Assembly: GCF_002113885.1 (NCBI RefSeq)
Contig: NW_018405052.1
Coordinates: 11,418 to 75,417, forward strand
Direction: 5' to 3'
From: Mizuhopecten yessoensis
Lineage: Eukaryota
Length of the DNA stretch: 64,000 bases
Part shown: positions 1,381 through 34,100 of the stretch, piece by piece
Position numbering within the stretch: the stretch's first letter is position 1
Layout: each line of letters begins with the position of its first letter
Notes under the pieces: model-generated
The model's input: only the letters and a program-made list of their open reading frames with translations
Database searches by the model: none
What the model was told of the DNA's origin: nothing
Program-made: the position numbers and the translations under genes

Positions 1381-1647
1381 TGTTTTATGAAACTTGTTTA
1401 GACATTTTTAGCATATCAATTTTTAGGCAATTTATTGAACTTTTATCAGAAATTATTAATATACTAAGAAGTAACTTTAGCATATTAAAAAAAATGATTA
1501 TTGTAAAAAACTATTAACTACTGGTTTAATATTTCATTTCAGCACATGAAAATAATTAAATAATCATAAAAGTATGTGTATGTTGATTGATTTGATCTTA
1601 CTGACTGAAATGGTGAAGGGAAATGAAGCCAATTTTTTTATTGTCAA

Positions 1648-2086: not shown

Positions 2087-2201
2087 GATGTTTTAAATTT
2101 GACTTAGACAATTTTTGTTGTTGGTATTTAAAATCTACAATTTCCAATTTTTGTTGTTATTTGGCATTGGCAATTTTTGTTGCTGTGATTTGACACTGAT
2201 A

Positions 2202-3130: not shown

Positions 3131-3139
3131 TGGCTATAA

Positions 3140-3890
3140 TTTGACATTGTCATTTTTTGTTGTTGTGAGTTGACATTAACAGTTTTTGTTGTTGTGATTT
3201 GACATTGACAGTTTTCGTTGTTGTTGTGGGTTGACATTGACAGTTTCTGTTGTTGTGAGTTGACATTGACAGTTTTTGTTGTTGTGGGTTGACATTGACA
3301 GTTTTTGTTGTGGTGAGTTTACATTGACTGTTTCTGTTGTTGTGATTTGACATTGACAGTTTTTGTTGTTGTGAGTTGACATTGACAGTTTTTGTTGTTG
3401 TGAGTTGACATTGACAGTTTAAGTTGTGGTGAGTTGACATTGACAGTTTTGTTGTTGTGGGTTGACATTGACAGTTTTTGTTGTGGTGAGTTTAACTTAA
3501 CTGTTTCTGTTGTTGTGATTTGACATTGACAGTTTTCGTTGTTGTGAGTTGGCATTGACAGTTTTTGTTGTTGTGTGTTGACATTGACAGTTTTTTGTTG
3601 TTGTGAGTTGACATTGACAGATATACAAATGGGTTTTCTTCCATGACAGTTTTTGTTGTTGTGATTTGACATTGACAGTTTTCGTTGTTGTGAGTTGACA
3701 TTGACAGTTTTTGTTGTTGTGTGTTGACATTGACAGTTTTACTGTGGTGAGTTTACATTGACAGTTTTTGTTGTTGTGAGTTGACATTGACAGTTTTTGT
3801 TGTTGTGGGTTGACATTGACAGTTTTTGTTTTTGTGAGTTGACATTGACAGTTTTTGTTGTTGTTGGTTGACATTGACAGATTTACTGTG
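3140..3890. repeat. 29-bp minisatellite, about 25 copies
   Basis: Unit ttgacattgacagtttttgttgttgtgag; accounts for the repetitive minus-strand ORFs. Confidence 0.95.
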
Positions 3891-4010
3891 GTTTGTCATT
3901 ATTTATTTATTTGTGATTCCTTAAGGTTTATAAATGATAGCCATTTCAAAAATAGGAGTTATGAGTACGACATGAAATGTATATGTTTGTAATGCTCTAT
4001 TTACTTTCAG

Positions 4011-4169
4011 ACACTTGCCCGAGAGGTTTTATGTCTGATGATGGTTTTCCTCCCTGCCGTCCCTGCGCTAAAGATTATTACTGGAGCAATTCTACATATT
4101 GTGAACAATGTCCACCCAATACCAGCACTGTAGAACAGAATGGCATGGGAGTTCTTGGGGATTGTAAAG
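4011..4169 (+). CDS. Exon 1 (in window): GCC2/GCC3 ephrin-receptor-like Cys-rich repeat
   Basis: tttcag|AC..AAAG|gtatgt, 159 nt, phase 1-1; TCPRGFMSDDGFPPCRPCAKDYY..CEQCP..DCK. Confidence 0.92.
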
Positions 4170-7100
4170 GTATGTTAAGCATTTATCTAATATTTTAAGT
4201 ATTTTCCCATTTGAACATAATACAGTAAACTTACACATTTTTGTGATGTGGCCACACGAGCCTTTAGACACACCTACCTTTTGAAAAACTAATATACACA
4301 GGCATTCGTCACAATTTATTACCCCTGTCCAATGAGGTTGGTAGGGGATATACAAATGGGTTTTCTTCCATGTGTCCGGTATTGCTTAAAAAGTCTTCTA
4401 GTTAACCTCATGAAACTTTGAAGGCGCATCATTCCAGTAGTCTAGTGTTGCTGTTTGATATTGAGGAGTTTTCATTTTTGACATTTTCCCAGTTGCCATG
4501 GAAATAAATAGCTGGAAATGCAAAAATTGTCGTTTCCGTAGCATACGTCAGGAACTGCTAGAGATAACTACCTAACTCTCTAACCACATGCATCTAGTTG
4601 TCCAGTAGTGCCTTCTGCTATTAGGGTAACCATAAGACTAAATAGCAGGAAATGCAAAAATAGTCAACTTATTCTTGATTAAATGCGTTCAACCTAGCAC
4701 ACTGTTGTCATGGTCATGTTTAACTATAGATAACTCTACTACTACAGCCGAACTCTTGCACAGAGATGTTGGATCTCCCAATCCCCGCAATTTATCTCAT
4801 GATGAAATCTGCCAGTAATTAATTCATAAAGAATAGAAATATCTTTGGTTTTAATGGTGTAAGATGGATTGATTTCTGACAAAAGGGGCAATTTCAGTGT
4901 ATTTTTTTCTTTTTTCATGGTTTGAATTACGTAGAAAAGAGGGAAAATGCAAATGAGTTTATTTAAAGGTCATAAAGGATATTTGAAATATATTCTTTCA
5001 GCTTAAGTAAGTCAAGTAAGGGATTGGTGCTGGAGTTTGTAAGGGGGAGGGGGGAACATAAGGATTTTAAATGTGGACATCTCCCCTTGCACACAAATTC
5101 TCCCTTAAAGACCCCCCCCCCCCCCCCTTTCCTCCCCTGTGTTGAATTTATTTGTATATTGTTTTTAGCTCACCTGCCCAAAGGGCAAGTGGGCTTATGC
5201 TATGACGCGCCATCCGTCTTCCGTCTGTTTGGCGTCAACTTTTTACTTTAAACAACTTTTTCTCAATAACCAAACAGCCTTGGATGATAATATTTGGCCA
5301 GGAGCATGCTGGGATAAAGGGCTACCAAGTTTGTTCAAACAAATGACCTTCACCCATTTTCAAGGTCACAGGGGTCAAATATGTTTAAAACTTTTGAACA
5401 ACTTCTCCTGAATACCAAAGATGCATAGGATCAAGATATTTGACAAGTATCATGCTCTGATGAAGGGCTACCAAGTTTGTTCAAATGAATGACCTTAATC
5501 TATTTTCAAGGTCACATATGTTTAAAACCTTTAAACAACTTCTTCTCAATAACAAAAAGGCCTTAGATGATGATATTTGGTCAGTAACATGGTGGGATGA
5601 AGGGCTACCAAGTTTTTTCAATCAATTGACCTGCACCCATCTTCAAGGTCACAGGGGTCAAATATATTTAAAACCTTTAAACAACTTCTCCTGAATACCC
5701 TACAAGATGCTTAGGATAATGATATTTGACCAGTATCACGCTGAGATGAAGGGCTACCAAGTTTGTTCAAACAAATGACCTTCACCCATTTTTAAAGTCA
5801 CAGGGGTGAAACATATTAAAAACCTTTCAACAACTTCTCCTCAATAACCAAAAGGCCTAGGATGATGATATTTGGCTAATATCATGCTTGGATGACTCAC
5901 GTTTTGACATACATATTTACTCGCATATTGACACACATACTGACATACATATTGACTCACTTACATATTGACACACATACTGACATACATATTGACTCAC
6001 ATATTGGCACACATACTGACATACATATTGACTCACTTACATATTAACACTCATACTGACAAACATATTGACTCACTTATGTATTGACACTCATACTGAC
6101 AAACATATTAACTCACTAATGTATTGACACTCATACTGACATACATATTAAGTCCCTTACGTATTGAAACACATATTGACACACATATTGACTCGCTTAC
6201 ATATTGACTCACATACTGACATACATATTGACTCACATACTGACAAACATATTGTCTAATTTACATATTGACTCACATTTTGACATACATATTGACACAA
6301 ACTGACAAACATATTGACTCACTTACATACTGACATATACTGACAAACATAATGACTCACTTACGTACTGACATATAATGACAAACATATTGACTCACTT
6401 ACATACTGATCGACATATACTGACAAACATATTGACTCGCTTACGTACTGACATACTGACAAACATTGACTCACTTACGTACTGACATATACTGACAAAC
6501 ATATTGACTCACTTACATACTGACATTAAGTGACAAACATATTGACTCACTTACATACTGACATACATATTGAATGGTGGTTGCAACTGATAAAATGTAG
6601 AACTGGATTTATATGATACTGACACAAAATGACCTGCTAATAAAATGTACCACATACGCTTTCCTTTTTTAGCTGAATGTCAGGCTGGAATGTTTTCCCC
6701 TACTGGCTATGAGCCATGTAAACCATGCCCAACAAATTTCTATCAGGTGTTGACTGGGCAGAAGGGATGTTTGGAATGTCCTGAAACACAGATAACAAAC
6801 AGTACTGGCAGTAACAGCTCAAACCAGTGTTGGACACCAGGTAAACCATTGTTTTGTGTGATATATAACGAGATATATAACTACCAGTACTAGCAGTATA
6901 AAGAACTTGAAGTAACAACTCAGCCCTGTGTGTTGTGTCAGTTAAACCATTGTTTTGTGAGATATATCACGACCAGTACTAGCAGTAACAACTCAGCCCT
7001 GTGTGTTATGTCAGTTAAACCGTGATTGTTTTGTGAGATATATAACGACCAGTACTGGCAGTAACAACTCAGCCCTGTGTGTTGTGTCAGGTAAACCATT

Positions 7101-10100
7101 GTTTTGTGAGATATATCATGACCAGTACTAGCAGTAACAACTCAGCTCTGTGTGTTGTGTCAGTTAAACCATTGTTTTGTGTGATATATCACGACCAGTA
7201 CTAGCAGTGACAACTCAGTCCTGTGTGTTATGTTAGGTAAACCATTTGTAAGAATTATTTATGATCATTCTTTGACTGCTATCTACTCTGTCACAATCAA
7301 AATGTCACACAAAAACTTTTCAATTGTTGTCATATATTAACCTGTATACAGTCTTCAATTACAAATCTAAAGAAAATGTTAAAAAAGCAGGAACTTATAC
7401 ATAGGAACCAATCACTAGTATCGGTACCACTTTGATATAGTTTATATAGTCTGTGGTATCATAGGAACCAATCACTAGTATAGGTACCACTTTGATATAG
7501 TTTATATAGTCTGTGATATCATAGGAACCAATCACTAGTATAGGTACCACTTTGTTATAGTTTGGGTAATCTGTGGTATCAAAGGAACCAATCACAAGTA
7601 TAGGTACCACTTTGATATAGTTTATATAGTCTGTGGTATCATAAGAACCAATCACTAGTATAGGTACCACTTTGTTATAGTTTATATAATCTGTGGTATC
7701 ACAGGAACCAATCACTAGTATAGGTACCACTTTGATATAGTTTATGTAATCTGTGATATCACAGGAACCAATCACTAGTATAGGTACCACTTTGTTATAG
7801 TTTATATAATCTGTGGTATCATAGGAACCAATCTCTAGTATAGGTACCACTTTGATTTAGTTTATATAATCTGTGGTATCATAGGAACCAATCACTAGTA
7901 TAGGTACTACTTTGATTTAGTTTATATAATCTGTGGTATCATAGGAACCAATCTCTAGTATAGGTACCACTTTGATTTAGTTTATATAATCTGTGGTATC
8001 ACAGGAACCAATCACTAGTATAGGTACCACTTTGTTATAGTTGATGTAATCTGTGGTATCACAGGAACCAATCACTAGTATAGGTACCACTTTGTTATAG
8101 TTGATGTAATCTGTGGTATCACAGGAACCAATCACTAGTATAGGTACCACTTTGATATAGTTTATATAATCTGTGGTATCATAGGAACCAATCACAAGTA
8201 TAGGTACCACTTCGTTATAGTTTATATAATCTGTGGTATCACAGGAACCAATCACTAGTATAGGTACTACTTTGTTATAGTTGATATAATCTGTGGTATC
8301 ACAGGAACCAATCACTAGTATAGGTAATATTTTGATATTATTCATATAATCTGTGGTGTCATAGGAACCAATCTCTAGTATAGGTACCAATTTGTTATAG
8401 TTTATATATCTGTGGTATCATAGGAACCAAGCTCTATTATAGGTACCACTTTGTAATAGTTTATGTAATCTGTGGTATCATAGGAACCAATCTCTATTAG
8501 TTTATATAGTCTGTGATATCATAGGAACCAATCACTAGTATAGGTACCACTTTGTTATAGTTGATGTAATCTGTGGTATCACAGGAACCAATCACTAGTA
8601 TAGGTACTATTTTGATATAGTTTATGTAATATGTGGTATCACAGGAACCAATCACTAGTATAGGTACTATTTTGATATTATTCATATAATCTGTGGTATC
8701 ATAGGAACCAATCTCTAGTATAGGTACCACTTTGTTATAGTTTATATATCTGTGGTATCATAGGAACCAATCTCTATTATAGGTACCACTTTGTAATAGT
8801 TTATGTAATCTGTGGTATCATAGGAACCAATCTCTAGTATAGGTACGATTTTGATATAGTTTATTTAATCTGTGGTATAATAGGAACCAATCACTAGTAT
8901 AGGTACTATTTTGTTATAGTTTATTTAATCTGTGGTATCATAGGAACCAATCTCTATTAGTTTATATAGTCTGTGATATCATAGGAACCAATCACTAGTA
9001 TAGGTACCACTTTGTTATAGTTGATGTAATCTGTGGTATCACAGGAACCAATCACAAGTATAGGTACCACTTCGTTATAGTTTATATAATCTGTGGTATC
9101 ATAGGAACCAATCTCTATTATACGTACCACTTTGTAATAGTTTATGTAATCTGTGGTATCATAGGAAACAGGAACCAATCACTAGTATAGGTACTATTGT
9201 GATATAGTTTATATAATCTGTGGTATCACAGGAACCAAGCACTAGGATAGGAACCACTTTGTTATAGTTTAGGTAATCTGTGGTATCATAGGAACCAATC
9301 TCTAGTATAGGTACCACTTTGTTATAGTTTCTGTAATCTGTGGTATCATAGGAACCAATCACTAGTATGGGTACCACTTTGATATAGTTTATATAATCTG
9401 TAGTATCACAGGAACCAATCACTAGGATAGGAACCATTTTGTTATAGTTTATGTAATCTGTGGTATCATAGGAACCAATCACAAGTATAGGTACCACTTC
9501 GTTATAGTTTATATAATCTGTGGTATCATAGGAACCAATCAATAGTATAGGTACCACTTTGATATAGTTTATATAATCTGTGGTATCACAGGAACCAATC
9601 ACTAGGATAGGAACCACTTTGTTATAGTTTATGTAATCTGTGGTATCATAGGAACCAATCTCTAGTATAGGTACCACTTTGTTATAGTTTATGTAATCTG
9701 TGGTATCATAGGAACCAATCTCTAGTATAGGTACTATTTTGATATAGTTTATTTAATCTGTGGTATCATAGGAACCAATCTCTAGTATAGATACCACTTT
9801 GTTATAGTTTATATAATCTGTGGTATCACAGGAACCAATCACAAGTATAGGTACCACTTTGTTATAGTTTATGTAATCTGTGGTATCATAGGAACCAATC
9901 TCTAGTATAGATACCACTTTGTTATAGTTTATATAATCTGTGGTATCACAGGAACCAATCTCTAGTATAGGTACCACTTTGTTATAGTTTATATAAGCTT
10001 TTTGAAGTACACCTCTTTCATTCATGTTTTAGAATTATGTCCTGCATCTCCCACACCATGCAGTGGAAATGGTTCATGCAGTGTGAAAAACCATGAAAAG

Positions 10101-13100
10101 TTCTGCAACTGCAATTCAGGTATTTAGAGTGACACCGCCAATACCAGCCTGTATTAATAACAATGTTACAATATAATTAAAAGGAAAATATGTTTTGTAG
10201 CTTTTGGATTAGCAATTACATGAATAAAATTGGAACGTTGTATAAAAGATTATTGTGGCCCCTTATATATATAATTAGGGCGGAGGAGCAGAACTGAATA
10301 GGGTAAATAGGAGACTTAAGTCTGCATGTGTCAGGTGCAAGGCAGGCTAGTCTGAGACCAGTGAAATCTCCATCTGGACTAGCTAGTGGTTTTAAAAGCT
10401 GCTAGTCCAATTTTCTAGACAAAATTTTAAATTACTTATAACGTTCAATGATATTGGGTGAGTAGAATTTGCACAAGGACTAGTAAAATGAAGTATACCG
10501 TTGATGATCCTGAAGAGATGAAAACACTCAGGCTACCAATATATTTGACATGGCATAATCATTTGTGTGTGAGGTGTAATGGCGGATACCTATTGGATGT
10601 ATATGGTAGGGCTAGTGACATCAAATATCCCTAATCCTTTACCTGGGCCCGTATATATGAAACCGTTCTCATGCTCAAGCATGGATTCTGATGTGCTGAA
10701 GCCAACTTTCTTGTTACTCGCTTAAATCCTGTAAAACAATCAAAAAGTCAAATGTAAACATTGAAACAGTAGTTAGCTTCAAGTCTCTTCAAAATGTTTC
10801 CAAAGCATTGACAAAATAAGATGTATTTATTAAGTTACAACAAGAACAATAAGTTAGACTTGAGCACAAAATCCATGCTTGAGCATGAGAACGGTTTCAT
10901 GAATACGGGCCCTGTACTAATGGAGAAAAGTAGTCTTTTTACATTATACATTGTATTGGTATGGAAGTTAGACCATTATGTATTTTAATTATTCAGATGA
11001 TTTGTTTAAGGAAGTATTCAGAAATGCAATCCTGATTGCAATGTGAATTTCTGGTGATTAAGGTGTTGTATTTTTTGTGTGCTATATTTTTAACAGGATA
11101 CTATGGTATGTGTAAGTTTTGTGTGCTATATTTTGGACAGGATACTATGGTATGTGTAATTTTTGTGTGCTATATTTTTGACAGAATACTATGGTATGTA
11201 TGTATGTGTAAGTTTTGTGTGCTATATTTTGGACAGGATACTATGGTATGTGTAATTTTTGTGTGCTATATTTTTTGACAGAATACTATGGTATGTATGT
11301 ATGTGTAAATTTTGTGTGCTATATGTTTGACAGGATACTCTGGAAGCGATTGTCAACTCATGAACAATTTCTGTGATGAGAGTCCTTGTGTCAGAGGAAC
11401 TTGTAATAATAACCAAGGTATTAGCTTCACCTGCACATGCGATACAGGTAAGTTATTTAAATTTTCAGAGAAAATTGGGGATATTAATTTGAGTGTATCT
11501 GTATGTTTTAAACATAGTATTGGAATGTTGGGAGAAAAATAATCATCCCCTACCTTGAGGGTGTGAAAGGGAATTCTCCAACCCTTGAAATGATTGTTTG
11601 AGCCAAGGGTTGGACAACCAAATGATCAACCTGAGAGTTGGAGATTCTTTGTCACACCCTCAACGTAGGAAAAGATTCTATTTATCCTACATATGAATAT
11701 TACTTCCTCCTTTATATAAAAATGAAGTCGTTCAGACTCCCCTTTTATTTTAAGGTTCTATTTTCGATTCAAAAGTCACCATTTTTGGTGGCCAGGTGAT
11801 GCTGTTTCTTTTCTAGACCAACTTTTTTTCAAAAACTAGTGCTCAACAAATTCTGTGGACAATGTCAGTCAATACTCAGAATTAATGCTTACAGGTTTTA
11901 CTGGGGACCGGTGTGATAGAGACACTACAAACCGTTGTACACCAAACACTTGCCAAGCTGGATCATGTAGAAATATAAAGAACGGTGCTGACTGTCTCTG
12001 TCCTCTTACTGGAGGATTCACACAGCCAAGGTAAGTAAAATATCTGGTCCTATATATCATAAACAGAACACAGCTTCATATTTTGATTCCCAAAATTTAC
12101 TTTTTGCTTTTCAGTAACAGGTCATTTCAGTTTATTAGGCCCCCGCATTGGAGATGGGGGTGCACTATAGTAATCAGTGTCCATTCACAATTTTATTTCC
12201 GACCTTATCTCCGAAACCAAAAGGCCTACCTTTCTGAAATTTGAAACGGTGATACCCTGTGAAATGTAAATGACAATACAGGATCATACCTGCTAATCCC
12301 TGAATCTCCCAATGGGGGTCATGACCCCTATTGGAAAAATCTGTGGGCGGTGATAACGCATGACAAAAAATTCACGTCAAAATTAATCATTTAATTTTTG
12401 CGACGTCACGGCATAACATATGTAATTGTGTCTTCTGGTATGGTTTAGGACTTTTTTAAAATAAATAAAACAACTCTTATTTTCACACATTTTGTTTTAT
12501 TACATTCTCTCTTTTCAAAATACTGATTTCCCTGTACATACAGGTAGTTTGAGTTAATTGTAGAAAACTTGGCATCTGATGCATACTGGAAGCATGAACT
12601 CATCTAGAAGCTCCTCTATCTATTTCTCCCTCTCATCTGCATGTACTACATTGGGAATCTGACTGTCTGCAGGTTGGAAACTGGAAAAAATAAAATATGC
12701 ATTTATGTTAAATACAGATTTTAAAGCAATCTTGCGATCGCGATATGGGAAAGCATTTTCATGCAGATTTTGGTAAATTAGAATGATCTGTCGTTGAGAA
12801 AGTAATATGCTCAGCACTGAAGTTGCTTAATAACGTGACTTTGCGTTTATAACCTTGTCGTCAGACATTGGAAATTCGATAATCGTATGTTTTATCATAA
12901 AACGCACCCCTACCTATCGAAAATAATTAAGTATACAGTACAGTTTACAATAAGAATGATCAGGCTCAATATTTTTATGACATAACAAAGCCACTCAAAA
13001 TCCCTTTTCCACAAAGTATTACAATAGCAGACATACTTTTTTTTTTTCTACGTTTAACGCAGTCCGAATTACGGTTGTGCATGTGAAATCGCACTGTTGT

Positions 13101-16100
13101 AATAGTAAACAGTACTCGCCTTTCAAATTTGCCTGGCTTCCACGAAAGAGAGACTGCCATTGTGAAAACATTTCAAATGGTGTACAGACTTTACCCATAA
13201 GTTAATGCTAAGACATACTAATACGAGCATGGATGCGAGTGATTCCGGGTCATGTTGACGGAATGCGGGAGATTTGTATCACCGGCGTGGGTCATAAGTT
13301 GGTTGCATTGCGGGTGATAAGTTAATTTTGCGGGTGTGACCCGCAGGATGCAGGTCATTTAGCAGGTATGCAGGTTGAGCAATTTTATAAGGTCCAGGGT
13401 TGAGGTCATTGTTACTAAAGCTAGACCATAGGAGTACATTCCTTATCTTGGAGAATCCGGAAGTCTATTGTTTGGAAGTTTGGTGATATACTGTGATAAT
13501 TATGTAGATGTGCAAGAGCTTGAGAGGTTTAAAAAGTTACGGCCAAGATAAGGGTCACTGTTACTAAAAACAGATTTTGGGGGTGGTCAGTCACGCACAT
13601 GGTGAGGCCTTTGCTGACCTGTCAGTGTTCTGGTTCATGCTAATTCACTTAAAAGTAAAGGTATATATAGCAAATGGTCCGTCCATCTGATTCTAATTTT
13701 GTCAGCTGAATCTTCTCTAATAAAAACCTCACAGATATGTTTATCAAGAGCCGATGATGTGTGTCCTGTAACATTCTCAGCTCTATAACCTACAGGTCAA
13801 GGTCAGATCAAAGGCCAAATAACCATAAAGCATAAGGTCATATCTTCTAAATGGCTCAGATAACTGATATTTAGCCGGAAGCTTTCTGAGGTAAAGTGGT
13901 ATCACAATTGTTGAGATAAATGTTCTTCACAGACATTTTCAAGGTCACAAGTCCCTTGAGAAATATGTGTTCAAATCATCGAATGACACATTCTTCAGAA
14001 CCATTTAGCATAGAGTTCTGTATTTTGCCTTTAAATTATTGTTGGGTGAAGCCAGCTTACTTTTATTCAAATAAATGCCCTTGACCTTCAATCAAAATTA
14101 CAAGGGTCAAAAGTTGTTAAAAAGGTTTAAAGGACTCCTTCTGATGAAACACGAGTAATACTATTAAGCCTGTATTGTTGTGGGGTCAGGTACATTGGTA
14201 AATACCCAGGTTAAATTGATCTTAATTTCACAGGGACCAACTGCCTTGATATTTTGAATACTTTCTTCTTGATAACGATGAAAAATGCAGTTGTGATATT
14301 TAGCCTTAATCAGCTTGTACCTGTTGGGAGTAACTGCTCAAATATGCATCAAAGCTGTTGTAATAAATAAGAAATAACTTAGTCAGAAGTTACAGTTGGT
14401 TAGCTCACCAGACCATTAGACTAACAGAACTACTAGGCCTGTATTCATTAGCTTTTCAGGAGTTATAGGCTATAATTGAGCAAGCTAGCCTCTAGTTTTG
14501 AGAAAGCTTGCTTATATACTTATTTATTTAGTAAAAGAACATCAGTCTTTCCTTTAATTTATCTGTGTTTTGAAAACCTAGATACATATTGTGAGTTGCT
14601 TTTACTGTTATATTTATGAAAGGCAATGATAATAATACAAGCATCACTCATTTCCTGTTTTATTTTGAAACTGAATAATTGTTGTAAAAAGGCAGATTTA
14701 GTATTGTGTAAAAGTTATTTTCTAAGTCTTTGTTATTTCCTTTGATTATAGCTGTGAACGTTTGGACAACTTGTGTGCTGGCATCCAGTGTTCTAATGGC
14801 GGTACCTGTGTCGCCTTTGGGTCTGTTCGTAAACAATGTCTCTGTCAGCCGGGATATACTGGTGAAAACTGTGAAATCAATATAAGTAAGTAAAGTGTGG
14901 CGTGTAATGGAACACCTAGAGCTCACAATAATGTATTGTAAAAAAAGAAGTCACGTTAGAGAGAAGGATATCGTTATTGTTTGGTAACATAGCATCTGGT
15001 ACAGCATACAAGTAATGTTTTATATTATAAGTGTCCTAATGGTATGAACTCAGTGGCTTAATACAAACATACTTATTATTGAGTCTTACGTAATAAAGCA
15101 ATACATTTGTTTTATGCAGATGAGTGTACTTTGAACCCACAAGGCTGTTTGTATAATGGCACATGTAGTGACGGTGTCAACGCCTACAGCTGCCAGTGTA
15201 GACCTGGCTTCAGTGGTAACAGGTGCCATGTCCGTAACAACTTCTGCAGCACTGACCCTTGTGCAGATGCTGAATGCTACAACGACTATGACAACTATAA
15301 ATCAGTATGCGTATGTCATGATGGATTTGAAGGTACTATCATGGAGTGTTAAAATTCATTTTGCATCCATATTCAGAATTTCTTTAAATCTTAAAAGGGT
15401 TACAAATCTGAAAGATGAATATCTTGTTTGAAAAAGAAAATATAATTATACATTTTTGCCAAAGATTGTGCTATTAAATCCCAAACTGTTTGATACAGCA
15501 ACAGTATCATTGTTGTTGGTAATTTTAAAATGCAATAAAGAGAAAATTTAATGGATTTCCATTTCGATACCATATGTATCTATTTCACTTGTATGGGATA
15601 ATATTCTGATGTTTCCACTCATGAAAAATATATATTGTACTCAACATAAAAAACCAATATATATTCACAAAACATTCGTATGGCAAACTTTACCGTTATT
15701 TTTACTGTGAAAAATATCAGTATCCTGCAATACTCGTGACATTAGCTCTGAAGAGCTAGAAGAGTTATTATGACGACAAAACATAAGAATAAATATCATT
15801 GCAAGGTAATAAAACATATTTATCATCTATACATATACTACTTTATACCACCTACCAGTAGCATGATAAATTCATTATCATTGGTTGTCAGTATGAAAAA
15901 TAGTTGAGAAAGGCTTGAGAAGAACTTAAGAACGGATTTCCCCATCTCCAGCACTTGGGAACGTATTTTCTCAAAAAAGAACGTCTGCTCGCTCCAGATG
16001 ACGTCCGAAACCGGAAATAGTGTCCAAACAAAAATGATCTGTGTAAGAAAATGGTCTGTCATAAACATATCAATACAAAGTTAGGAAAAATATTGTGAGA

Positions 16101-19100
16101 ATAACAACACCATTTCAGTTGTAAATGTGCATCTGGAAAAGCCAATGACGATAGGATTGTTTTAAAAATATTTATTCTATGTAGTTTTAAGGTTCATTGT
16201 ATTCCTCCGTGCAAAACTTCTATTTGTTTACGTTTGTCATCCTTGACCATTGAGCTTAAAAGTCATTTGGAAAACATGGTGTTTAGTTGAGTTTTTTAAA
16301 TGGAGAAATATATAAGGTAGTAGTATATAGATGATAAATAGTTTACCTTACAGTATTTTCAGTGTTTGTCATCCATATACAGTGATAATCTATAAATAAA
16401 AACTACTAAAGCTAGGTATAAGAGATTTTTTTCAAACATGATAATAAAAAGTACGTAGATAAGAGCAAGCACAAATCTCATGCAAATCTGATTGTGTAAG
16501 GATATATCTTTGAAGGGGCTTAAACAGTTTTACCTATCCTTAGTTTATAATTAATGTTATGGAACTGACTTATTTCATTAGGACTGGTAGGTGGTATGAA
16601 GAAAAATGTGTAAATTAGATTGAATAGATCTGTGATAACTTTACCTGTGCTCAACTTAAGTTTTCTACTCATAACTTGACCAAAATAGAAAACTATTCCT
16701 TACATTATAGTACTTTTCTGTAAATGTTTCCCAACTATTTTTGACATTTTCATAACTTAATGATGTATAATCAGTTCAATAAAAGTAACAGCCAGAAATT
16801 TGCAGAAATCTTGGTTTACTCTGCCAACATCTACTGTTGATAAGTTCCTGTAATAGTGTCTCGTTAATGGAAAGTTTGCGTAGCTCGGCTCGACTTTCTG
16901 AATTGTCAACACCATGGAAACTTGTTCAGGTTTTATGGTCAGACTATAAGATGATACCTCCAGTTTGTGAGGACAATGGTTATTGAGTGAATGTCTGTGT
17001 AAACAGTATATAAACAATAAAAATCAGACTAACAAAAATATTCAACTTATCAGATGGTACAACTATTGTTGTATACTGTAGGAGCACTTGGTCAAATAGA
17101 TACTAACATTGTATAGCAGTAAAATGAATTATTGATTACTGTATTACAGTTTTAATCATCAACAAATTACATAAGTATTGGTCATGAAAAGTTCTTTTTT
17201 ACACAACCAATAAAAGTTTCTATGTGACGTTTCAATGACTAGTACGGTATGTACACTGTCACCTTCATCAGACAAATGACCAGTGAAGCATGGTGCTGGA
17301 TCGAGACAACTTACCTGAGACTAATTGGCTCCTTTAAACCTTCCGACTTAAGCTACGGAAATACAGTAATGAAAAATTAAAAGAAAAACTCAGAATGAAC
17401 ATAACAAATAATTTGAATGTTTTTCTTGTGTTACATTTGTAGTACAAGATGCTGGAAATGGGAAATGTACATCTACGGTGAAGTGTCCTCTGGGTAATGC
17501 ATTCTGTAATAATGGCAGCTGCAACAACGATAAGTGTTTCTGTCTGAATGGCTATACAGGTTCACGCTGTCAGCATGACTTTACAGACTGTACCATGAAC
17601 TCGTGCAAGAATGGTGGAACATGTGTAGACAAACATTCGGGTTTTGACTGTATGTGTATGTCTGGCTATACAGGTGAGTCTGTCTGACGTACACCATCTG
17701 TGTAATACTGTAATAAAATGTCTTAACTATACAGGTGAGTCTGTCTGACGTACACCATCTGTGTAATACTGTAATAAAATGTCTTAACTATACAGGTGAG
17801 TCTGTCTGACGTACACCATCCGTGTAATACTGTAATAAAATGTGTTAACTATACAGGTGCGTCTGTCTGACGTACATCATCTGTGTAATACTGTAATAAA
17901 ATGTGTTTACTATACAGGTGAGTCTGTCTAACGTACACCATCTGTGTAATACTGTACTATAATCTGTTAACTATACAGGTAAGTCTGTCTAACGTACACC
18001 ATCTGTGTAATACTGTACTATAATCTGTTTACTATACAGGTGAGTCTGCCTAACGTACACCATCTGTGTAATACTGCCTGTAAATTTTTAACCGTTTAAG
18101 ATATCTTGATCAAACTTGAAGTATACCTGCATCCCTAACAGAAGGTGTGCAGTGCACTGGAATTAGGTCTTGTGCCCCACTATATACAGAGTTATTGCCC
18201 TTTGTTTATTTTTTATACGGAAGTTTGTCCCGAGCATAAGTTCCATGTTATTTCACCTTCATTGACCAAATTTACCATATTCATGTATCTTGGGAAGGCG
18301 GAATCTCTCGCACTGCAATCGGGTCTTGTGCCCCACTATATTAAAAGTTTAAATAAAGTAAACGAAGAAGCATCAACACCAAGGATTCCGTTACAGGAAG
18401 AGGTTTTATTGTTGACATGTTTAAGTTTATAAAAAATAATGAGCCATTAGAGGAACCAGATTGTAATCAGATGTGTGAAAATTCCTATTTTTATATACAT
18501 GTTAATGTTTCTATTATAAGTACCAAAGCTGCCGAAACTTAACAAAATTGTTAAGACAATAATTTAAATGTTTAATGGTTTAGGATATACACACCTTTAT
18601 CTTGATGTGACCTTTCTATTCTTCCTAATATTGGCTAATAAGGAGACATTCTAGTTTAAACTAATGTTCTTGAACCACTTTCAAGGTCTTAGGGGTCGAA
18701 TGTATGAAACAATTGCTTCTGAATTACTAAGAAGTATTGGGCAATGATATTTTTCCTGTAGCTTAATAGTAAAGTGATATGAAGTGTTGGAGCTGAAAAA
18801 AAGATCTAGACAAGGTCACGTTAGTAACAGAAGTAAATCTTTGACCTTTAAACTCTTTGAAGGTCACAGATGTAAGATGAATAACAGGTAAGAGCAATAA
18901 AGACCACTTGAGTTTGATAAGATGAACACAATTTGATCGTGCTATCAGAATAGGCAATGGGGGTCTGTCTCTTCCTTTTAAGACTAAGTCCATGGGGCAC
19001 AACGAGACCCAAACTGTTTAACCATATAAACAATTTCTTGGTGTAAAAGACCAATAGACATTCTACCCGATTGATATTTAAGGGTAAAAACCCCTTCCCT

Positions 19101-22100
19101 TAGGGACTTAGTCTTTGGCTTATACCCATGGGTTTGGAAACATAGCCCAAATGGAGAGCCAAAGTTAGATTTGTTATACTCAAGAAACTAAATTTTAATA
19201 AACCAGCTCTAGGATTGTCTACGCCTTATCTTGTATGTCGTGTATACAATCTAGTTTAAAAAAAAGGAAGAATCCAAGTCGAACAAATATACTCATAATC
19301 TCATATTGCCAAATAATGTGCATTTTTGAAAATATTGACTTGCAGCAAATTTATATTTGATTAACCATTTGAAATGCTATAACGGAATGACTGTTGTTTT
19401 GTAGGGAACGACTGCAGTGTCAACATTAATGATTGTTTGGGTCAGTGCCAAGGTGAACATGTCATTTCAACAAGCGTAGGATGTATGGACAAAGTTAATG
19501 ACTTCATGTGCAACTGTGAAGCAGGATGGACAGGCAAAAACTGCACAGTGAGTCTTATTTCTACATTGAAGTAATAAGGGATGATATAGTGTTTAAAGCA
19601 CTAAATGGTCCCTTCATTATGACAAACCCCTTCCAACTAATTGAGGGGGTAGGAGGTATATAATAGTCACTGTCAGTGCATCCAAATTTAGTTTTTATTG
19701 GCTCACCAGTCCGAAGGGCTAGTGCTATGGCGAAGCGTCTGACATTGGTCCGTCGTTCATCAACTTTTCCTTTAAGCAACTTCTACTGAAGAAAGGATAG
19801 GACTAGAGTCATGATATTTGGCTGAAAGCATCGTTGGTAAAAGCACCACTAAATTTGAGAATGAAAAATGACCTTGACCTTCTTTCAAGGTCACAGGGGT
19901 CTCAAATGTGTCAAATACTTAAAAAGACTTCTTCTGCAGAACTGAAAGGTATAGAATCTTAATATTGGCGGGTAACTTCTTTTGATTGAGCACTACAAAG
20001 TTTGAGAATGAAAATGACCTTGACCTACACTTTAATGATCACAGGGGTAAAATATGTCGAACCCTTCAAACAACTTCTTCTGTAGAACTGAAAGAACTGA
20101 AGACGCCATCATCCAAATATTGAGATTGTGTTATCATTTGGCTGGTGGCTTCTTGGAATAGAGCCTGACAAAGTTTGAGAATGAAAATGACCTTGACCTA
20201 CTTTCAAGGTCACAGGGGTAAAATATAGCAAAAACATCAGAAGATTTCTGATGAATAATTAAATGGCATAAAATCATAATATTTGGCTGTAGGTTTCACG
20301 GATTGAGCTCAACTAAGTTTGCAATTGAAAATTACTTCAACCTGCTATCAAGGTCACAGGGGTCAAATATAGCAAAAACTGTAAACAGCTTTTTTTGAGA
20401 AAGGGAATGGCATAGACTTCCAAGTGTTACAACTGAATGAGTTTGTAAGACTTTCAAGTCACTGTGGTGAAATGTGTTGAAATCTTATAACAGGTTGTTT
20501 TGAATAACCAAGAAACATAGGTAAAGAGTTTGATCCTATAGGTTTATATAAATCTTATTTGGTATAAAGTATTCTTTGATCCTAAAGGTTTATATAAATC
20601 TTATTTGATATAAAGTATTCTTTGATCCTATAGGTTTATATAAATTGTATTTGATATAAAGTATTCTTTGATCCTATAGGTTTATATAAATCTTATTAGA
20701 TATAAAGTATTCTTTGGTCCTATAGGTTTATATAAATCTTATTTGATATAAAGTATTCTTTGATCCTATAGGTTTGTATAAATCTTATTTGATATAAAGT
20801 ATTCTTTGATCCTATAGCTATATATAGGTTTATATAAATCTTATTTGATATAAAGTATTCTTCGATCCTGTAGGTTTATATAAATCTTATTTGATATTAA
20901 GTATTCTTTGATCCTATAGGATTATATAAATCTTATTTGATATAAAGTATTCTTGGCCCAATATGATTATTCTTGACCAAATATGATTCAATGTTGTATA
21001 AACCATGCCCCAACCCCAAAGGGTACAAAGGAATGGGACCCAATAAGGTAAGGGTGTTGCTGAGGGACAGAGCCAATGTTTGGAATATGTGTAGTACAGT
21101 AAAACATTTAATGAAAACTTTTGCTATGACTGCTTTAATGTCCTGGTGAGCAATACAGTCCCACTGGGCATTATAGTATGGTAACATTAAGTCAAACACT
21201 TGATTATATTTTTGGTCATTGGTCAAGGTTAAAGGGTCAAAAGTTATGAGAAAATCAGGATGGGAAGGAATGAGGGTGGTGTAGTGGGGTATATCAATGT
21301 GAGCCTCTGATCACTTATTTACCAAAATCTGAAACAACTGTTAAACCCTGATGTAAAGTTTAATGTTTTGATAGCAAGAGACCTGGTGTCATTATAACTG
21401 GTCTTCAGCATGCTAGTGTATTTGTTGAATGACTTAACATACTTTTAAGGCAACTCGTTTGATTTATTGGAACACTTTGCTGAAATGATGAGAGGAAGCA
21501 TAATACATACAATTGGTACCATCTTGGTGCATCACTACTGCTTTTTATTTACAGGAGAACATTGATGAATGTGCTAGCTACCCTTTTTACTTACAGGAGA
21601 ACATTGATGAATGTACTAGCTACCCTTTTTATTTACAGGAGAACATCGATGAATGTGCTAGCTACCCTTTTTATTTACAGGAGAACATCGATGAATGTGC
21701 TAGCTACCCTTTTTATTTACAGGCGAACATTGATGAATGTGCTAGCTACCCTTTTTATTTCCAGGAGAACATTGATGAATGTACTAGCTACCCTTTTTAT
21801 TTACAGGAGAACATTGATGAATGTACTAGCTACCCTTTTTATTTACAGGAGAACATTTGTGAATGTGCTAGCTACCCTTTTTATTTACAGGAGAACATTG
21901 ATGAATGTACTAGCTACCCTTTTTATTTACAGGAGAACATTTATGAATGTGCTAGCTACCCTTTTTATTTACAGGAGAACAGTGATGAATGTGCTAGCTA
22001 CCCTTTTTATTTACAGGAGAACATTGATGAATGTACTAGCTACCCTTTTTATTTACAGGAGAACATCGATGAATGTGCTAGCTACCCTTTTTATTTACAG

Positions 22101-25100
22101 GAGAACAGTGATGAATGTGCTAGCTACCCTTTTTATTTACAGGAGAACATCGATGAATGTGCTAGCTACCCTTTTTATTTACAGGCGAACATTGATGAAT
22201 GTGCTAGCTACCCTTTTTATTTACAGGAGAACATTGATGAATGTGCTAGCTACCCTTGCAGGCATGGAGCAAGCTGTACTGATGGGGATAATACCTACAC
22301 ATGTAATTGTACAATAGGTTGGACTGGACAAAATTGTGATACTGCAATAAACAACTGCCCTGACAATAAATGCAAAAATGAAGGAAACTGCTTCAACATG
22401 AATGAAGGATTCTTCTGCAGGTATAGGATATTTTCTGTGTGCATATCATCCATTCTACACTTGTATCAGACATTTAAAAAGTATGTAAAAAAAAGTAGAC
22501 ATTTTAGAGGTATATCATTAAGAATTACCAGGTATATAAGACATTATACAGTTAAATTAGACTACCTACAGGTATATTAATCAACCTACAGGTATATTAA
22601 TCATCCTACAGGTATATCAGACAACTAACAGAAATATCAGACAACCTACACGTATATTAAATATTCTTATAAATATTCTTCAGGTACATCAGACACTCTT
22701 AAGGTACATCAGACACTCTTCAGGTACATCAGACACATCAGGCACTCTAAAGGTACATCAGACAATCTAAAGGTACATCAGACACTCACTCTAAAGGTAT
22801 ATCAGACACTCCCTCTAAAGGTACATCAGACACTCTTCAGGTACATCAGACACTCTTAAGGTTCATAAGACACTCTAAAGGTACATCAGACACTCTCCAG
22901 GTACATCAGACACTCTCCAGGTACATCAGACACTCTTCAGGTACATCAGACACTCTTCAGGTATATCAGACACTCTAAAGGTACATCAGACACTCTAAAG
23001 GTACATCAAACACTCACTCTAAAAGTACATCAGACACTCTAAAGGTACATCAGACACTCTTCAGGTACATCAGACACTCACTCTAAAGGTACATCAGACA
23101 CTCTAAAGGTACATCAGACACTCTAAAGGTACATCAGACACTCTAAAGGTACATCAGACACTCTAAAGGTACATCAGACACTCTAAAGGTACATCAGACA
23201 CTCTAAAGGTACATCAGACACTCTAAAGGTACATCAGACACTCTAAAGGTACATCAGACACTCTAAAGGTACATCAGACACTCTAAAGGTACATCAGACA
23301 CTCTAAAGGTACATCAGACACTCTAAAGGTACATCAGACACTCTACAGGTACATCAGATACTCTAAAGGTACATCAGACACTCTAAAGGTACATCAGACA
23401 CTCACTCTAAAGGTACATCAGACACTCACTCTAAAGGTACATCAGACACTCTTCAGGTAACTTAGACAACCTTCAAATATATCAAACATTTTTCAGGTAA
23501 ATCAGACAACTTACACATATATTTAATATTCTTTAGGTAAATCAGACAACCTACACATATATTTCACATTCTTTAGGTAAATCAGACAACCTTCACATAT
23601 ATTTTACATTCTTTAGGTAAATCAGACAACCTACACATATATTTTACATTCATTAGGTAAATCAGACAACCTACACATATATTTTAAATTCAAGTAAATC
23701 TGACTACCTACAGGTATATTAACTCATTCAGCCCTGGAGACACATTTTAACTCTTCCAATGCAAAGGTTGGAATAGTTCATTATGAAATTTAAGGGATTA
23801 ATGAGTACAACATTCTTCAGATAAATCAGACAACCTACAGTTATATTAGACAACCTACAGGTAAATCAGACAATGTACAGGTATATCAGACAATCTACAG
23901 ATATAACATACAACCTATAGGTATATCAGACAACCTATAGGTATATCAGACATTCTACAGGTAAATCAGACAATGTACAGGTATATCAGACAATCTACAG
24001 ATATAACATACAACCTACAGGTATATCAGACAACCTACTGGTATATCAGACATTCTACAGGTATATCAGACAACCTTCTGGTATATCAGACATTCTACAG
24101 GTATATCAGACAACCTACAGGTATATTTGACTACCGACAGGTATATCAGACATTCTTCTAGGGCCTTTTGTTGTATTGAGGTATAATGCTCAGGCATATG
24201 GGTCTGTTATTTATTAATATTTGTTTATTAGAGAATCTTTTTTGATTCAGTTGCCTTGGAGGAACAACAGGGAAAACATGCTCCAACTTCCCTCCTGTTT
24301 GTAACACCATCACTCCATGTACTGCAGCCAAAGGACAGTGTGTTGATGAGGAAGGCACAGCAAAGTGTGACTGCATACCAAGTAAATTTCTCATTGTCAT
24401 TTATTGATTGCTTGTTGTTTATTTCTGGTAGATTTATCATCACTAGTTGTCTGCTTGTTGACTTGACCTGTAACATGGTACTGGTCCAGCCTCTAAACTA
24501 TGTCTTTAACTTCAACATGTAGATTGTTCATCCTGCAGTACTCTTGTTAATGAAGTTCCAGAAGGCCTTGAGAAATAGGGGTTGTCAATGTGTTTGAAAT
24601 GATTAACCTTGAAATTGGTTCAAGGTCACTGAGACAAAATCTGTTAGTATTACTGCAAACAACATTATATCAAAAAGTTCCTAAGGTCTAGAGCAGTATG
24701 TTATGAAGACCAGCCATGCACAATATGTATGCCCCGCCATAAAATGGGGGGGGGGGGGGGGGATATAGTGTTGCCCATGTCTGTCCCGTCCCGTCCCACC
24801 CATGAGCGGGGGCATTTATGTCTTACAAACATTTTCTAGTTCTTAAATATTGTGTTGAGGTCAAGGTAAGTTTTAAGAGCTGGCAGGGATGAAAGGTTCA
24901 TTCGAGGTTTTGTATTCAAGACTACTTCTCCTGAAACATTTGCTGGATTTTAATTGCTGTTGACATTTAACATCATTAGGACAGGTCTTTGTCCCCTAGA
25001 GGCAGAGAAAGGACAATTTGGATGTTTTAAACATTAGATGTAGACTCCCAAGTATTTTTAATTTTAACTAAAATTATGATTTATAGGAAATAAATGAAGG

Positions 25101-31100: not shown

Positions 31101-34100
31101 TAAGAAATGGTGACTAGTGAGAAAACATGTCACCCATACTACCATATTTATCCTGCAATAAGCCCAGGGGGCCAACACATAATCTCTGACTGAAAGTAGA
31201 GGGATGGGCTTATTACAGGACAATGGGGAAGCTTTTCATTCTAACTGCAATATATATTGGTGGGCTTATTACCAAGCATGGACTTATTGTTGGATAAATA
31301 CGGTAATGTTTTTAGCTCACATGGCCCTCCGTACTGCATCGTGCATCATTCGTCTGTCGGTCCGTCAACTTTTTCTTTGAGCGACTTCTTCTGAGGAACT
31401 TGAGGGCCTAGAGTTATGATATTTGGCCAGTAGGTACCTGTGATAGACTACTATAAAGTTTTCTCTTTAAAATGACCTTGACTTACTTTCAAGGTCACAG
31501 GGGTCAAATATGTCAAAAACTTTAACAATCTTCTTCTCAAGTTCCATAAGGCATAGGGTCATGATATTTTGCCAGTAGGTACCTAGGTTAGAGTGCTATA
31601 AAGTTTACTGATTAAAATTACCTTGACCGACTTTCAAGGTCACAGGGGTCAAATATGTTGAAAACTTTAACAGTCTTCTTCTCCAGTTCCATAAGCCCCA
31701 GGGTCATAATATTTTGCTAATAGGTACCTGTGATGGAATGCTATTAAGTTTCCTCATTAAAAGGACATTGACCTACCTTCAAGGTCACAGCGGTCAAATA
31801 TGTCAAAACACTTCAAACGACTTCTCATGAAGAACTAAAAGGTATAGAATCTTCATATTTGGATGATGGCTTTCTAGGATGGAGCCTGACAAAGTTTGAT
31901 TATGAAAATGACTTTGACCTACTTTCAATGTCACAGGTATCAAATGTGCCAAACTTTTAAAACAAATTCTCCTGGAGAACTGAAAAGTATAGAATCTTTA
32001 TATTTTGGTGGTTGCTTCCTTGGATATAGAGCCCAACAAAGTTTGAGAATGAAAAGGACTTTGACCTACTTTCAAGGTCACAGCGGTCAAATATGTCAAT
32101 TTCTTTAAACGACCTTTTCTGAAGAACTAAATGGTATAGAACCTTCATATTTAGCTGTTGGCTTCCTGAGAAAGAGCCTGACAAAGTTTGAGAATGAAAA
32201 TGACCTTGAACTAATTTCAATGTCACAGATATTAAATATGTCCAAAACATCAAACGACTTCTGAATAATCAAAAGGAATAAAATTATAATATTTGGCTGG
32301 TGGCTTCCTTGGATAAAGATCGACAAAGTTTGAGAATAAAAATGACTTCAACCTACTTTCAAGGTCACAGCGGTCAAATATGTCAAACTCTTTAAACAAC
32401 TTCTTCTGAAGAACTAAATGGTATAGAACCTTCATATTTGGCTGTTGGCTTCCTGAGATAGACCCCGACAAAGTTTGAGAATGAAAATGACCTCAACTTA
32501 CTTTCAAGGTCACAGGTATTAAGTATGTCAAAAATATCAAACGACTTCTCCGAAAATCGAAAGGCATAAAATTATAATATTTGGCTGGTGGCTTCCTTGG
32601 ATAGAGCTCACCAAAGTTTGTAAATGAAAATGACCTCAACCTACTTTAAAGGTCACAGGGGTCAACATCATTTCAAAGGATTTGTTCTGAAGAACCAAAA
32701 GGAATGGGTTCATAAGATTTGGCTGGTAGCTTTTTGGGATAAAGCTTACAAAGTTTGAGAAGGACAATGACTTTGACCTACTTACAAGGTCACAGGGGAA
32801 AATATGTCAAGCAACTTCTGAAGAAGAACCAAAAAATATAGAATCTTATAATAATATTTGGCTGGTAGTTTTAACAGATGGAGCCAACAAAGTTTGCGTG
32901 GGAAATATTTGTAGTGCAATATAATATTTAATGACAATATATTGCTATGACTGCTTAAATATTCAGGTGAGCGATACAGACACTCTGGGCCTCTTGTTTT
33001 GTTTACAAACATGGCAGACTACTGTCGGTTGAGTTGTTACTGAAATATTGGGATGGGAGAAAAATAAGCATCCCCTCCCTTGAGGGTGTAACAGTGAAAT
33101 CTCCAACCCTCTGGGTGATTTCTTTGGGTTGTCTTACCCTCAGCAGAGCCTCAGGTTAGACAACCAAAAAAGATCACTACTTGAGTAGGAGATTTCTCTT
33201 TCACACCCTAAAGGTAAGAGAAGATTCTATTAATAATTATATACATTTAACATTAAATCATTCAGAAATAAATGTATCAACACAACCTCACATATGACAA
33301 TTCAAAACAAATATATACATTATAAATCAAAAGACAGGGATATCACTGTAGTTATATATGAACAATAATTTAATATTACATATCACATTACCATCTTAAT
33401 CTTTATTGTTTCTTGTTTCTGTAGAGATATTCATCACCAAGAACCAGGCTGGATGGACTCTCCTCCTACTTCTAATTATTTGCTGAAAGTGACTAATGAA
33501 GGTGTAGTTTTTGACAATGGTACTGACTTAAAAATGGTGGAGTTTGGGAAGAACATCTGTGACAAGATCTGGCATCATGTATCAGTGACTTATCACAAAA
33601 ACGGTACAACCTATGTTAAACTGGACTCAACTCCCAAGGATCCCTTTACGCAGACTGTGCCGCGGTCATTTTCAAAAGTGTGAGTGAAAATGTGGTTAAA
33701 AAAGTAATGTACTATTGTATCACCTCATTAAGTAGTTCAAGATGAGTTTAATAGCCAATTTAATTGAACAGATGAGTACACCTCAGTCACACTTCGGTAA
33801 GGGGGTTTGGTATAAATAGATAGGTTTCAGTTCACCTGGCCAGGCAGAGCTTGTGAGATGGCACAGCATCTGTCATCTGTTGGCCATCATCAACTTTCAC
33901 TTCAAAAGCCTATACCTCCAATATGACTCCACAGATTGGCACCAAATTTGATGTGAATATGCCCCCCAGGGGGAAAAAGGGCAGGGCCAAAGAAGGGAAA
34001 ATAGAGGTTTTAATTTAAATGCCTAATCTTACCAATTTTTATTTTTATTTTTTATTAACCAATTATTTTTCATCTGATGTCATGGGGCAATGCAACTTTT

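What the first reader, a model, noticed from the sequence alone, without database searches (positions are those of the whole stretch)
21541..22420. 17 tandem in-frame 3' splice sites: possible splice-tunable or VNTR-coded insert in an EGF chain
Seen: 17 copies of ctttttatttacag|GAGAACATTGATGAATGTGCTAGCTACC. All retain CAG|G and a pyrimidine tract, the period is exactly 42 nt, and there are no indels or stops. The upstream exon ends in phase 0, so every acceptor gives an in-frame mRNA adding 0-16 copies of ENIDECASYPFYLQ (up to 224 aa). Each copy has the start of a calcium-binding EGF motif and an unpaired Cys. Inference: either the spliceosome skips 16 near-identical acceptors, or the protein has a ladder of length isoforms in which intron sequence has been exonised. 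Absence of stops could simply reflect recent amplification.
Basis: partly seen in the sequence, partly recalled or inferred. Interest (0 to 1): 0.88.

Follow-up and report, generated by a model that had tools for sequence, protein, structure and literature searches.

The report
Silent spare acceptors in scallop intron
A 42-base piece spanning an intron end and an exon start has been copied 17 times head to tail, but RNA shows only the copy next to the real exon is spliced, so this is an ordinary, already named kind of intron repeat ("mirage") and not a protein-length ladder.

Summary
The array is real as described. It has 17 copies of 42 nt at 21541-22254, with no indels. Every copy keeps CAG|G, the frame is open, and the upstream exon ends in phase 0.

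The isoform ladder is not supported. In four RNA runs from two studies, the only joint across this intron is 19547->22227 (GT..AG), which uses the last acceptor. Exon 10 has contig depths of 212-704. The 16 upstream copies have none, apart from one 72-nt contig of depth 3.4.

The variants in the array look neutral: 2 synonymous and 6 non-synonymous types, including loss of the calcium-binding Asp. The open frame and intact AGs are what chance gives.

Eleven of the 16 silent acceptors match the used one from -20 to +3. The choice must therefore depend on what lies beyond +28, meaning the real exon body and its donor 194 nt away.

This is an acceptor-side "mirage" minisatellite, known from amphioxus. 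It mirrors the human F7 intron 7 VNTR and extends the human CBS 844ins68 case. This scan has already reported the same kind of repeat on other DNA of this genome. At least five more such arrays lie in this window.

The copy number is unverified, because the assembly is fragmented.

The parts
19405..19547 (+). Exon 9 of the EGF-repeat gene. It ends in phase 0 (ACA|GTGAGT).
   Evidence: Sequence. Pfam EGF hit. RNA contigs of X17 and X19 cover 19403-19547 and join directly to 22227 (tables 5 and 8).
19548..22226 (+). Intron 9 as actually spliced (GT..AG, 2679 nt). The whole array lies inside it.
   Evidence: Joint 19547->22227 in X17 (depth 236), X19 (depth 704), X23 (1 read) and X24 (1 read). 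No other GT..AG joint was found.
21541..22212 (+). Sixteen silent copies of the unit (14 nt of intron end plus 28 nt of exon start). Their unused acceptors would start exons at 21555 + 42k, for k = 0 to 15.
   Evidence: RNA depth is 0 in X23, X24 and X17. X19 has only a 72-nt contig of depth 3.4, against 632-704 on exon 10.
22213..22226 (+). Intron part of the 17th unit: the pyrimidine tract and CAG of the acceptor that is used.
22192..22196 (+). TTGAT, a perfect yUnAy match with its A at -32. It is the candidate branch site of the used acceptor and lies in the exon-derived part of unit 16. This is inferred, not mapped.
   Evidence: The nearest upstream AG is at -21/-20, so by the first-AG rule (PMC1431707) the branch point must lie within about 36 nt of the acceptor.
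22227..22420 (+). Exon 10 (194 nt). It encodes one calcium-binding-type EGF module plus the start of the next, and its donor is at 22421.
   Evidence: RNA contigs cover 22227-22420 and continue into the exon at 24251 (tables 7 and 8). Pfam EGF hit at residues 230-259 of the 288-aa read-through.
22255..22257 (+). CTT shared by the unit start and the sequence after the last unit. This 3-nt microhomology marks the edges of the founding duplication.
   Evidence: (17.1 copies; the unit starts CTT and the exon continues CTTGCAGG).

Best explanation
This is an acceptor-side 'mirage' minisatellite. A 42-nt segment spanning the intron 9/exon 10 boundary was duplicated in tandem between two CTT microhomologies. 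It then grew to about 17 copies by slippage or unequal exchange. Because the true exon body follows only the last copy, the splicing machinery pairs that last acceptor (22227) with the exon's donor 194 nt downstream. The other 16 complete acceptor modules stay silent inside the intron. The mRNA and protein are unchanged, and the array drifts as neutral intron DNA. Shown here: the array, the single splice joint, the lack of RNA over the array, and the neutral variant pattern. Inferred: the origin by microhomology, the branch site inside the repeat unit, and exon definition as the reason why the last copy is chosen.
For: Array anatomy. Only joint 19547->22227, in 4 RNA runs from 2 studies, with exon depth 212-704 against 0-3.4 on the array. 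X19 carries SNPs (19473 A>G, 22315 T>C), so it is an individual or haplotype other than the assembly. 11 of 16 silent acceptors equal the used one from -20 to +3, and the only consistent difference starts after +28. There are 8 variant types, 2 synonymous and 6 non-synonymous, including Asp>Tyr and Asp>Cys in the DEC motif. No constraint is seen on AG or on the frame. Pfam sees an EGF domain only in the true exon. No RNA structure sets the last copy apart (z = +0.78). The unit is unique to this locus in the genome. The donor array at 17666-18076 in the same gene follows the same exon-proximal rule, since the contigs join the unique end of exon 8 to 19405. Literature: mirages do not disturb splicing (PMC3087553; PMC3902484). 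In F7 only the exon-proximal donor is used (PMC1557585). In CBS 844ins68 the distal of two duplicated acceptors is used (PMC2630376).
Against: Only four runs of unknown tissue were examined. The raw-read runs have a single junction read each. Assembled contigs drop rare variants, so a minor isoform of up to about 1% is not excluded. One 72-nt contig of array sequence (depth 3.4 in X19) could come from pre-mRNA or from rare use of an upstream acceptor. Exon definition is inferred, not tested. Early globin constructs with duplicated acceptors gave conflicting results (discussed in PMC1557585).
Confidence: 0.85

Rival explanations
1. Splice-tunable ladder: upstream acceptors are used in some tissues, stages or stresses. 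This would add 1-16 in-frame copies of a 14-aa unit to the EGF chain.
For: All 17 acceptors are intact and in frame. A 72-nt contig of array sequence exists in RNA run X19 at depth 3.4. Few tissues were sampled.
Against: No joint to any upstream acceptor in 4 runs. Array depth is at most 0.5% of exon depth. Each unit would add an unpaired Cys and only 9 residues of an EGF module. Variants destroy the calcium-binding Asp. No protein in two very large libraries carries the repeat.
Confidence: 0.06
2. Functional decoy array: the 16 silent acceptor modules bind U2AF/U2 and modulate the speed or efficiency of intron 9 removal. Copy number would then tune expression and not protein length.
For: Each unit carries a branch-like motif, a pyrimidine tract and an AG. 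X17 shows some unspliced intron at depth 6.4 against 236 on the exon.
Against: There is no sign of constraint on the units. The same gene holds at least five other boundary arrays with unrelated units, which fits a mutational by-product. Exon depth in the contigs is high, so splicing is efficient.
Confidence: 0.05
3. Assembly artefact: the tandem array does not exist, or it is grossly mis-sized in the draft assembly.
For: The genome is in 82,659 contigs. A mirage array was mis-assembled in the amphioxus draft (PMC3087553).
Against: An independent RNA run (X19) holds a 72-nt contig that runs from the end of one unit through a whole unit into the next, with no mismatch. So at least the tandem junction is real. 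The 17 units carry an ordered mix of 8 variants, which is unlike a collapsed or stuttered artefact.
Confidence: 0.03

Closest known systems
'Mirage' minisatellites of amphioxus (Adh3, globins BflGb6/BflGb9, troponin C, PGBD5)
   Same: These are tandem repeats whose unit spans an exon-intron boundary. BflGb6 is the same acceptor-side type (3' end of the intron plus 5' part of the exon), with the authentic junction at the edge of the array. Many units keep their splice signals, and normal splicing is not disturbed (PMC3087553; PMC3902484).
   Different: The host is a mollusc, not a cephalochordate. The unit is shorter (42 nt against 150-160 in BflGb6) and there are more copies (17 against 3-6). 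The unit happens to be in frame and open. Length polymorphism, shown for amphioxus, could not be tested here.
Human F7 intron 7 37-bp VNTR with 5' pseudo-sites
   Same: A minisatellite whose edge unit contains the authentic splice site, followed by 5-9 identical silent copies. Only the exon-proximal site is used (PMC1557585).
   Different: F7 duplicates a donor, and this array duplicates an acceptor (its mirror image). The F7 pseudo-sites were shown by mutagenesis to be functional, and nothing of that kind is known here. The donor array at 17666-18076 in this window is the direct counterpart of F7.
Human CBS 844ins68 (c.844_845ins68)
   Same: A duplication of an intron/exon acceptor junction. 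The machinery strongly favours the distal copy next to the remaining exon, so the mRNA is normal (PMC2630376).
   Different: CBS has two copies, not 17. The CBS choice has been ascribed to specific elements (Romano et al. 2002, cited in PMC2630376; that paper is not held, so I did not read it).
Tandem-acceptor alternative splicing (NAGNAG and longer in-frame tandem sites)
   Same: Several in-frame AGs follow one another upstream of one exon.
   Different: In that class two or more sites are used and give alternative mRNAs. Here only one is used, and the sites are 42 nt apart, each with its own pyrimidine tract.

Membership tests
Mirage minisatellite (tandem repeat of an exon-intron boundary) | Head-to-tail array of minisatellite-size units | tested here: met
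   17 units of 42 nt, 95% matches, no indels.
Mirage minisatellite (tandem repeat of an exon-intron boundary) | The unit spans a boundary of the host gene, and the authentic junction sits at the edge of the array | tested here: met
   The unit is 14 nt of intron end plus 28 nt of exon 10 start. The RNA-confirmed acceptor 22227 belongs to the last unit.
Mirage minisatellite (tandem repeat of an exon-intron boundary) | Regular splicing is kept and the duplicated sites are not used | tested here: met
   The only joint is 19547->22227 in 4 RNA runs, with no exon-level depth on the array. Limits: few runs, and low raw-read depth.
Mirage minisatellite (tandem repeat of an exon-intron boundary) | Copy number unstable between haplotypes or individuals | not testable with these tools
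F7-type pseudo-splice-site VNTR | Identical pseudo-sites follow the authentic site, and only the exon-proximal one is used | tested here: met
   11 of 16 silent acceptors are identical to the used one from -20 to +3. Only the exon-proximal one is joined. The arrangement is mirrored: acceptor, not donor.
F7-type pseudo-splice-site VNTR | The pseudo-sites work when the authentic site is inactivated | not testable with these tools
   This needs minigene mutagenesis.
Tandem-acceptor alternative splicing / in-frame isoform ladder | Two or more of the tandem acceptors appear in mature mRNA | tested here: not met
   No joint to 21555...22185 in any of 4 runs. Bins 21460-22215 have depth 0, except 2.1 in one bin of X19.
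Coding VNTR of EGF modules | The repeat unit encodes a domain and is part of the mRNA | tested here: not met
   The unit holds only 9 residues of an EGF start plus 5 intron-derived residues. Pfam finds EGF only at residues 230-259 of the 288-aa read-through. The array is not in the mRNA.

The most novel reading that the evidence does not exclude
This array may be one product of a process that preferentially starts minisatellites at exon edges in this genome, with the introns of this gene grown largely by amplifying their own splice junctions. Six of 28 arrays in the window straddle an exon edge, against about one expected from random local duplication. Separately, rare or tissue-specific use of the silent acceptors is not excluded.
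Probability: 0.2. Interest if true: 0.55.

Novelty: new member of a known kind. Interest (0 to 1): 0.22.

Why it matters
The case itself is ordinary: a neutral intron repeat that leaves the protein unchanged. It has two modest uses. First, it is a clean natural experiment on 3' splice-site choice. Seventeen acceptors share the same local sequence, and only the one next to the exon body is used. The ancestral branch point, now about 700 nt upstream, cannot be the one in use. Second, it warns annotators and sequence-only readers that in this genome an open, in-frame chain of perfect splice sites is likely to be a mirage array, not coding sequence.

Tried and rejected
1. Isoform ladder: rejected on the RNA evidence.
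2. Selection to keep the AGs or the open frame: rejected, because both are what chance gives. The skew of changed cells towards the exon-derived part (P = 0.03 by cells) disappears when variant types are counted (P = 0.47).
3. RNA structure hiding the upstream acceptors: no support (z = +0.78).
4. Dispersed repeat family: rejected. The unit occurs only here in the genome. The one weak hit (L002, 68% identity) is an unrelated 37-nt array.
5. Proteins carrying the repeat: none among proteins of 158-504 aa, and none among the best 150 of 1.84 billion representatives. The one hit aligned to the array part, P0244, is an unrelated 14-aa repeat protein. Multi-EGF proteins swamped the list, so the gene's own product was not identified.
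6. Recursive re-splicing after use of an upstream acceptor: excluded by sequence, because the joint would read ACA|GAGAAC with no GT.
7. Romano et al. 2002 on CBS acceptor choice is not held in the library.
8. A paper search meant to confirm the species by assembly size gave nothing decisive. The name 'Yesso scallop' comes from earlier notes of this scan and was not checked here.
Exons were handled one by one, by reference.
Full report
OBSERVATION. The array is in the sequence as described. Tandem Repeats Finder reports 21541-22257, period 42, 17.1 copies, 95% matches and no indels. Cutting the region into units gives 17 full copies. Each has 14 nt of intron end (a pyrimidine tract and CAG) followed by the first 28 nt of the exon. 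All 17 keep CAG|G. There are 18 changed cells, which reduce to 8 variant types. The first and last units equal the consensus. The frame that reads ENIDECASYPFYLQ is open, but so is a second frame.

GENE CONTEXT. The window carries, on the + strand, a long gene made of EGF and ephrin-receptor-like cysteine-rich exons (Pfam PF00008, PF12661 and PF07699). The upstream exon 19405-19547 ends after a full codon at ACA|GTGAGT. Every one of the 17 acceptors would therefore be in frame, adding 0-16 units, up to 224 aa.

RNA EVIDENCE. One search for sequencing runs gave RNA runs of the same organism. I laid two raw-read runs (X23, X24) and two runs kept as contigs (X17, X19) on 19300-22520.
- The only GT..AG joint is 19547->22227. 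It appears in a 7384-nt contig of X17 (depth 236), in a 3772-nt contig of X19 (depth 704), and in one read each of X23 and X24.
- In both contigs the two exon pieces are adjacent in the record.
- The loose ends continue into the unique end of exon 8 on one side and into the exon at 24251 on the other.
- Depth over 21460-22215 is zero in X23, X24 and X17.
- X19 has a single 72-nt contig (21994-22065, depth 3.4, no mismatch), against 632-704 on exon 10.
- That contig runs from the end of one unit through a whole unit into the next. It shows that the tandem junction exists in another sample. X19 also differs from the assembly at 19473 and 22315.
- Its depth is at pre-mRNA level. X17 likewise shows unspliced intron at depth 6.4.

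The limits are four runs from two studies, unknown tissues, one junction read per raw-read run, and the fact that contigs drop rare variants. A minor isoform of up to about 1% is not excluded.

IS THE ARRAY UNDER CONSTRAINT? No.
- The 8 variant types split 2 in the 14-nt intron part and 6 in the 28-nt exon-derived part, which is the expected ratio (P = 0.47).
- In the reading frame, 2 are synonymous and 6 are not. Random change gives 20 synonymous to 96 non-synonymous. Two of the observed changes replace the Asp of the DEC motif, with Tyr and with Cys.
- The chance of no stop among 8 random variant types is 0.52, and the chance of never hitting an AG is 0.68.
- Only 2 of the 6 boundary arrays in this window have a period divisible by 3.
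- Pfam sees an EGF domain only in the true exon.
- No protein in two very large libraries carries the repeat.

ORIGIN (inferred). The unit starts with CTT, and the exon continues with CTT after the last unit (22255-22257). The founding duplication therefore lies between 3-nt microhomologies, as replication slippage would give. The same variants recur at scattered positions: G33A in copies 2, 6, 7, 9 and 12; T23C in 3, 4, 13 and 15; A16C in 5 and 16. This pattern points to later growth by multi-unit exchange. The unit occurs nowhere else in the 988-Mb assembly, so it arose locally.

WHY THE LAST ACCEPTOR? Shown: 11 of the 16 silent acceptors are identical to the used one from -20 to +3. The only consistent difference begins after +28, where the silent copies run into the next pyrimidine tract and the real one runs into the exon body. 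No RNA structure distinguishes the last copy (z = +0.78).

Inferred:
(a) The nearest upstream AG lies at -21/-20. The 3' splice site is normally the first AG downstream of the branch point, and AGs within 12-15 nt of the branch are bypassed (PMC1431707). The branch point in use must therefore lie within about 36 nt of 22227, in the exon-derived part of unit 16. A perfect yUnAy match, TTGAT, has its A at -32 (22195). The ancestral branch point, now upstream of copy 1, cannot be the one used. Every unit is thus a complete acceptor module.
(b) The choice is best explained by pairing across the exon with the donor at 22421, which gives the shortest exon (194 nt).

The donor-side array at 17666-18076 in the same gene obeys the same rule, because the contigs join the unique end of exon 8 (first donor, 17673) to 19405. 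Pairing across the intron would have favoured the opposite copies in both arrays. Re-splicing after use of an upstream acceptor is excluded, because the joint would read ACA|GAGAAC, without a GT.

COMPARISON WITH WHAT IS KNOWN. Tandem repeats that span an exon-intron boundary were named 'mirages' in amphioxus. BflGb6 is the same acceptor-side type. Many units keep AG/GT signals, and RT-PCR shows regular splicing (PMC3087553; also PMC3902484). The human F7 intron 7 VNTR is the donor-side mirror image, with only the exon-proximal site used (PMC1557585). Human CBS 844ins68 duplicates an acceptor junction, and the distal copy is used (PMC2630376). Earlier notes of this scan report many such arrays elsewhere in this genome, which they call the Yesso scallop. 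I checked the cited literature but not the species name. This finding is therefore a new member of a known kind, already met by the scan on other DNA.

SURROUNDINGS. Tandem arrays make up 47% of the window. Besides this one, five arrays are built from exon edges of the same gene:
- 6838-7246: donor side, 73-nt unit.
- 11073-11343: acceptor side.
- 17666-18076: donor side, 61-nt unit, 7 copies.
- 49777-51423: donor side, 49-nt unit.
- 51425-56966: acceptor side, 50-nt unit, about 110 copies.
These were verified. Six of 28 arrays straddle an edge, against about 1.0-1.4 expected if founding duplications fell at random (P about 0.0005-0.003). This is a rough, post hoc count with hand-drawn exon edges.

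LIMITS. The copy number of 17 rests on one fragmented assembly (82,659 contigs). A mirage array was mis-assembled in the amphioxus draft. Copy-number variation, minor isoforms, the branch point and the role of exon definition remain untested.

VERDICT. This is an ordinary, neutral, acceptor-side mirage minisatellite of modest interest as a natural splice-site competition experiment.

Noticed in passing
window 17666-18076: Donor-side mirage: 7 copies of a 61-nt unit that starts with the last 8 nt of exon 8 plus GTGAGT. The RNA contigs join the unique end of exon 8 (first donor, 17673) to 19405, so here too only the exon-proximal copy is used.
   Followed up: partly
window 49777-56966: An intron almost filled by two boundary arrays. 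One is a 49-nt unit that starts TGTG|GTAAGT, copied from the upstream donor (about 34 copies). The other is a 50-nt unit that ends TGTTTCAG|TTCAATG, copied from the downstream acceptor (about 110 copies). No RNA check was done.
   Followed up: partly
window 6838-7246 and 11073-11343: Two more boundary arrays. The first is a 73-nt donor-side unit that includes about 40 nt of exon end. The second is an acceptor-side array whose units carry an acceptor, 10 nt of exon start and a GTATGT donor-like motif.
   Followed up: partly
whole window: 47% of the window is tandem arrays. 6 of 28 arrays straddle an exon edge, against about 1.0-1.4 expected from random local duplication. The estimate is rough and post hoc.
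   Followed up: partly
window 19732-20379: A dispersed repeat inside intron 9 has very high RNA depth (contig depths up to about 150,000). It shows many variant letters and 'goes back about 600' joints, so it belongs to an abundant family that is tandem or transcribed elsewhere. The loose-end sequences resemble the 145-nt repeats at 5246-5895 and 31405-32818.
   Followed up: no
window 22529-24158: The 20-nt repeats that fill most of intron 10 each carry CAG|GTA, which resembles the exon 10 donor CAG|GTATAG 108 nt upstream. This may be an old, diverged donor-side array. The RNA uses the first donor at 22421.
   Followed up: no
L002 1-1829 (G000:C167:202377-204205): A 37-nt array of about 49 copies whose unit contains an acceptor-like TTTATTGACAG|GAG. 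It may be another boundary array in a different gene.
   Followed up: no
window 19473 and 22315: Exonic differences in the RNA: A>G at 19473 in X19, and T>C at 22315 in X19, X23 and X24. They are probably alleles and show that these samples are not the assembled haplotype.
   Followed up: no
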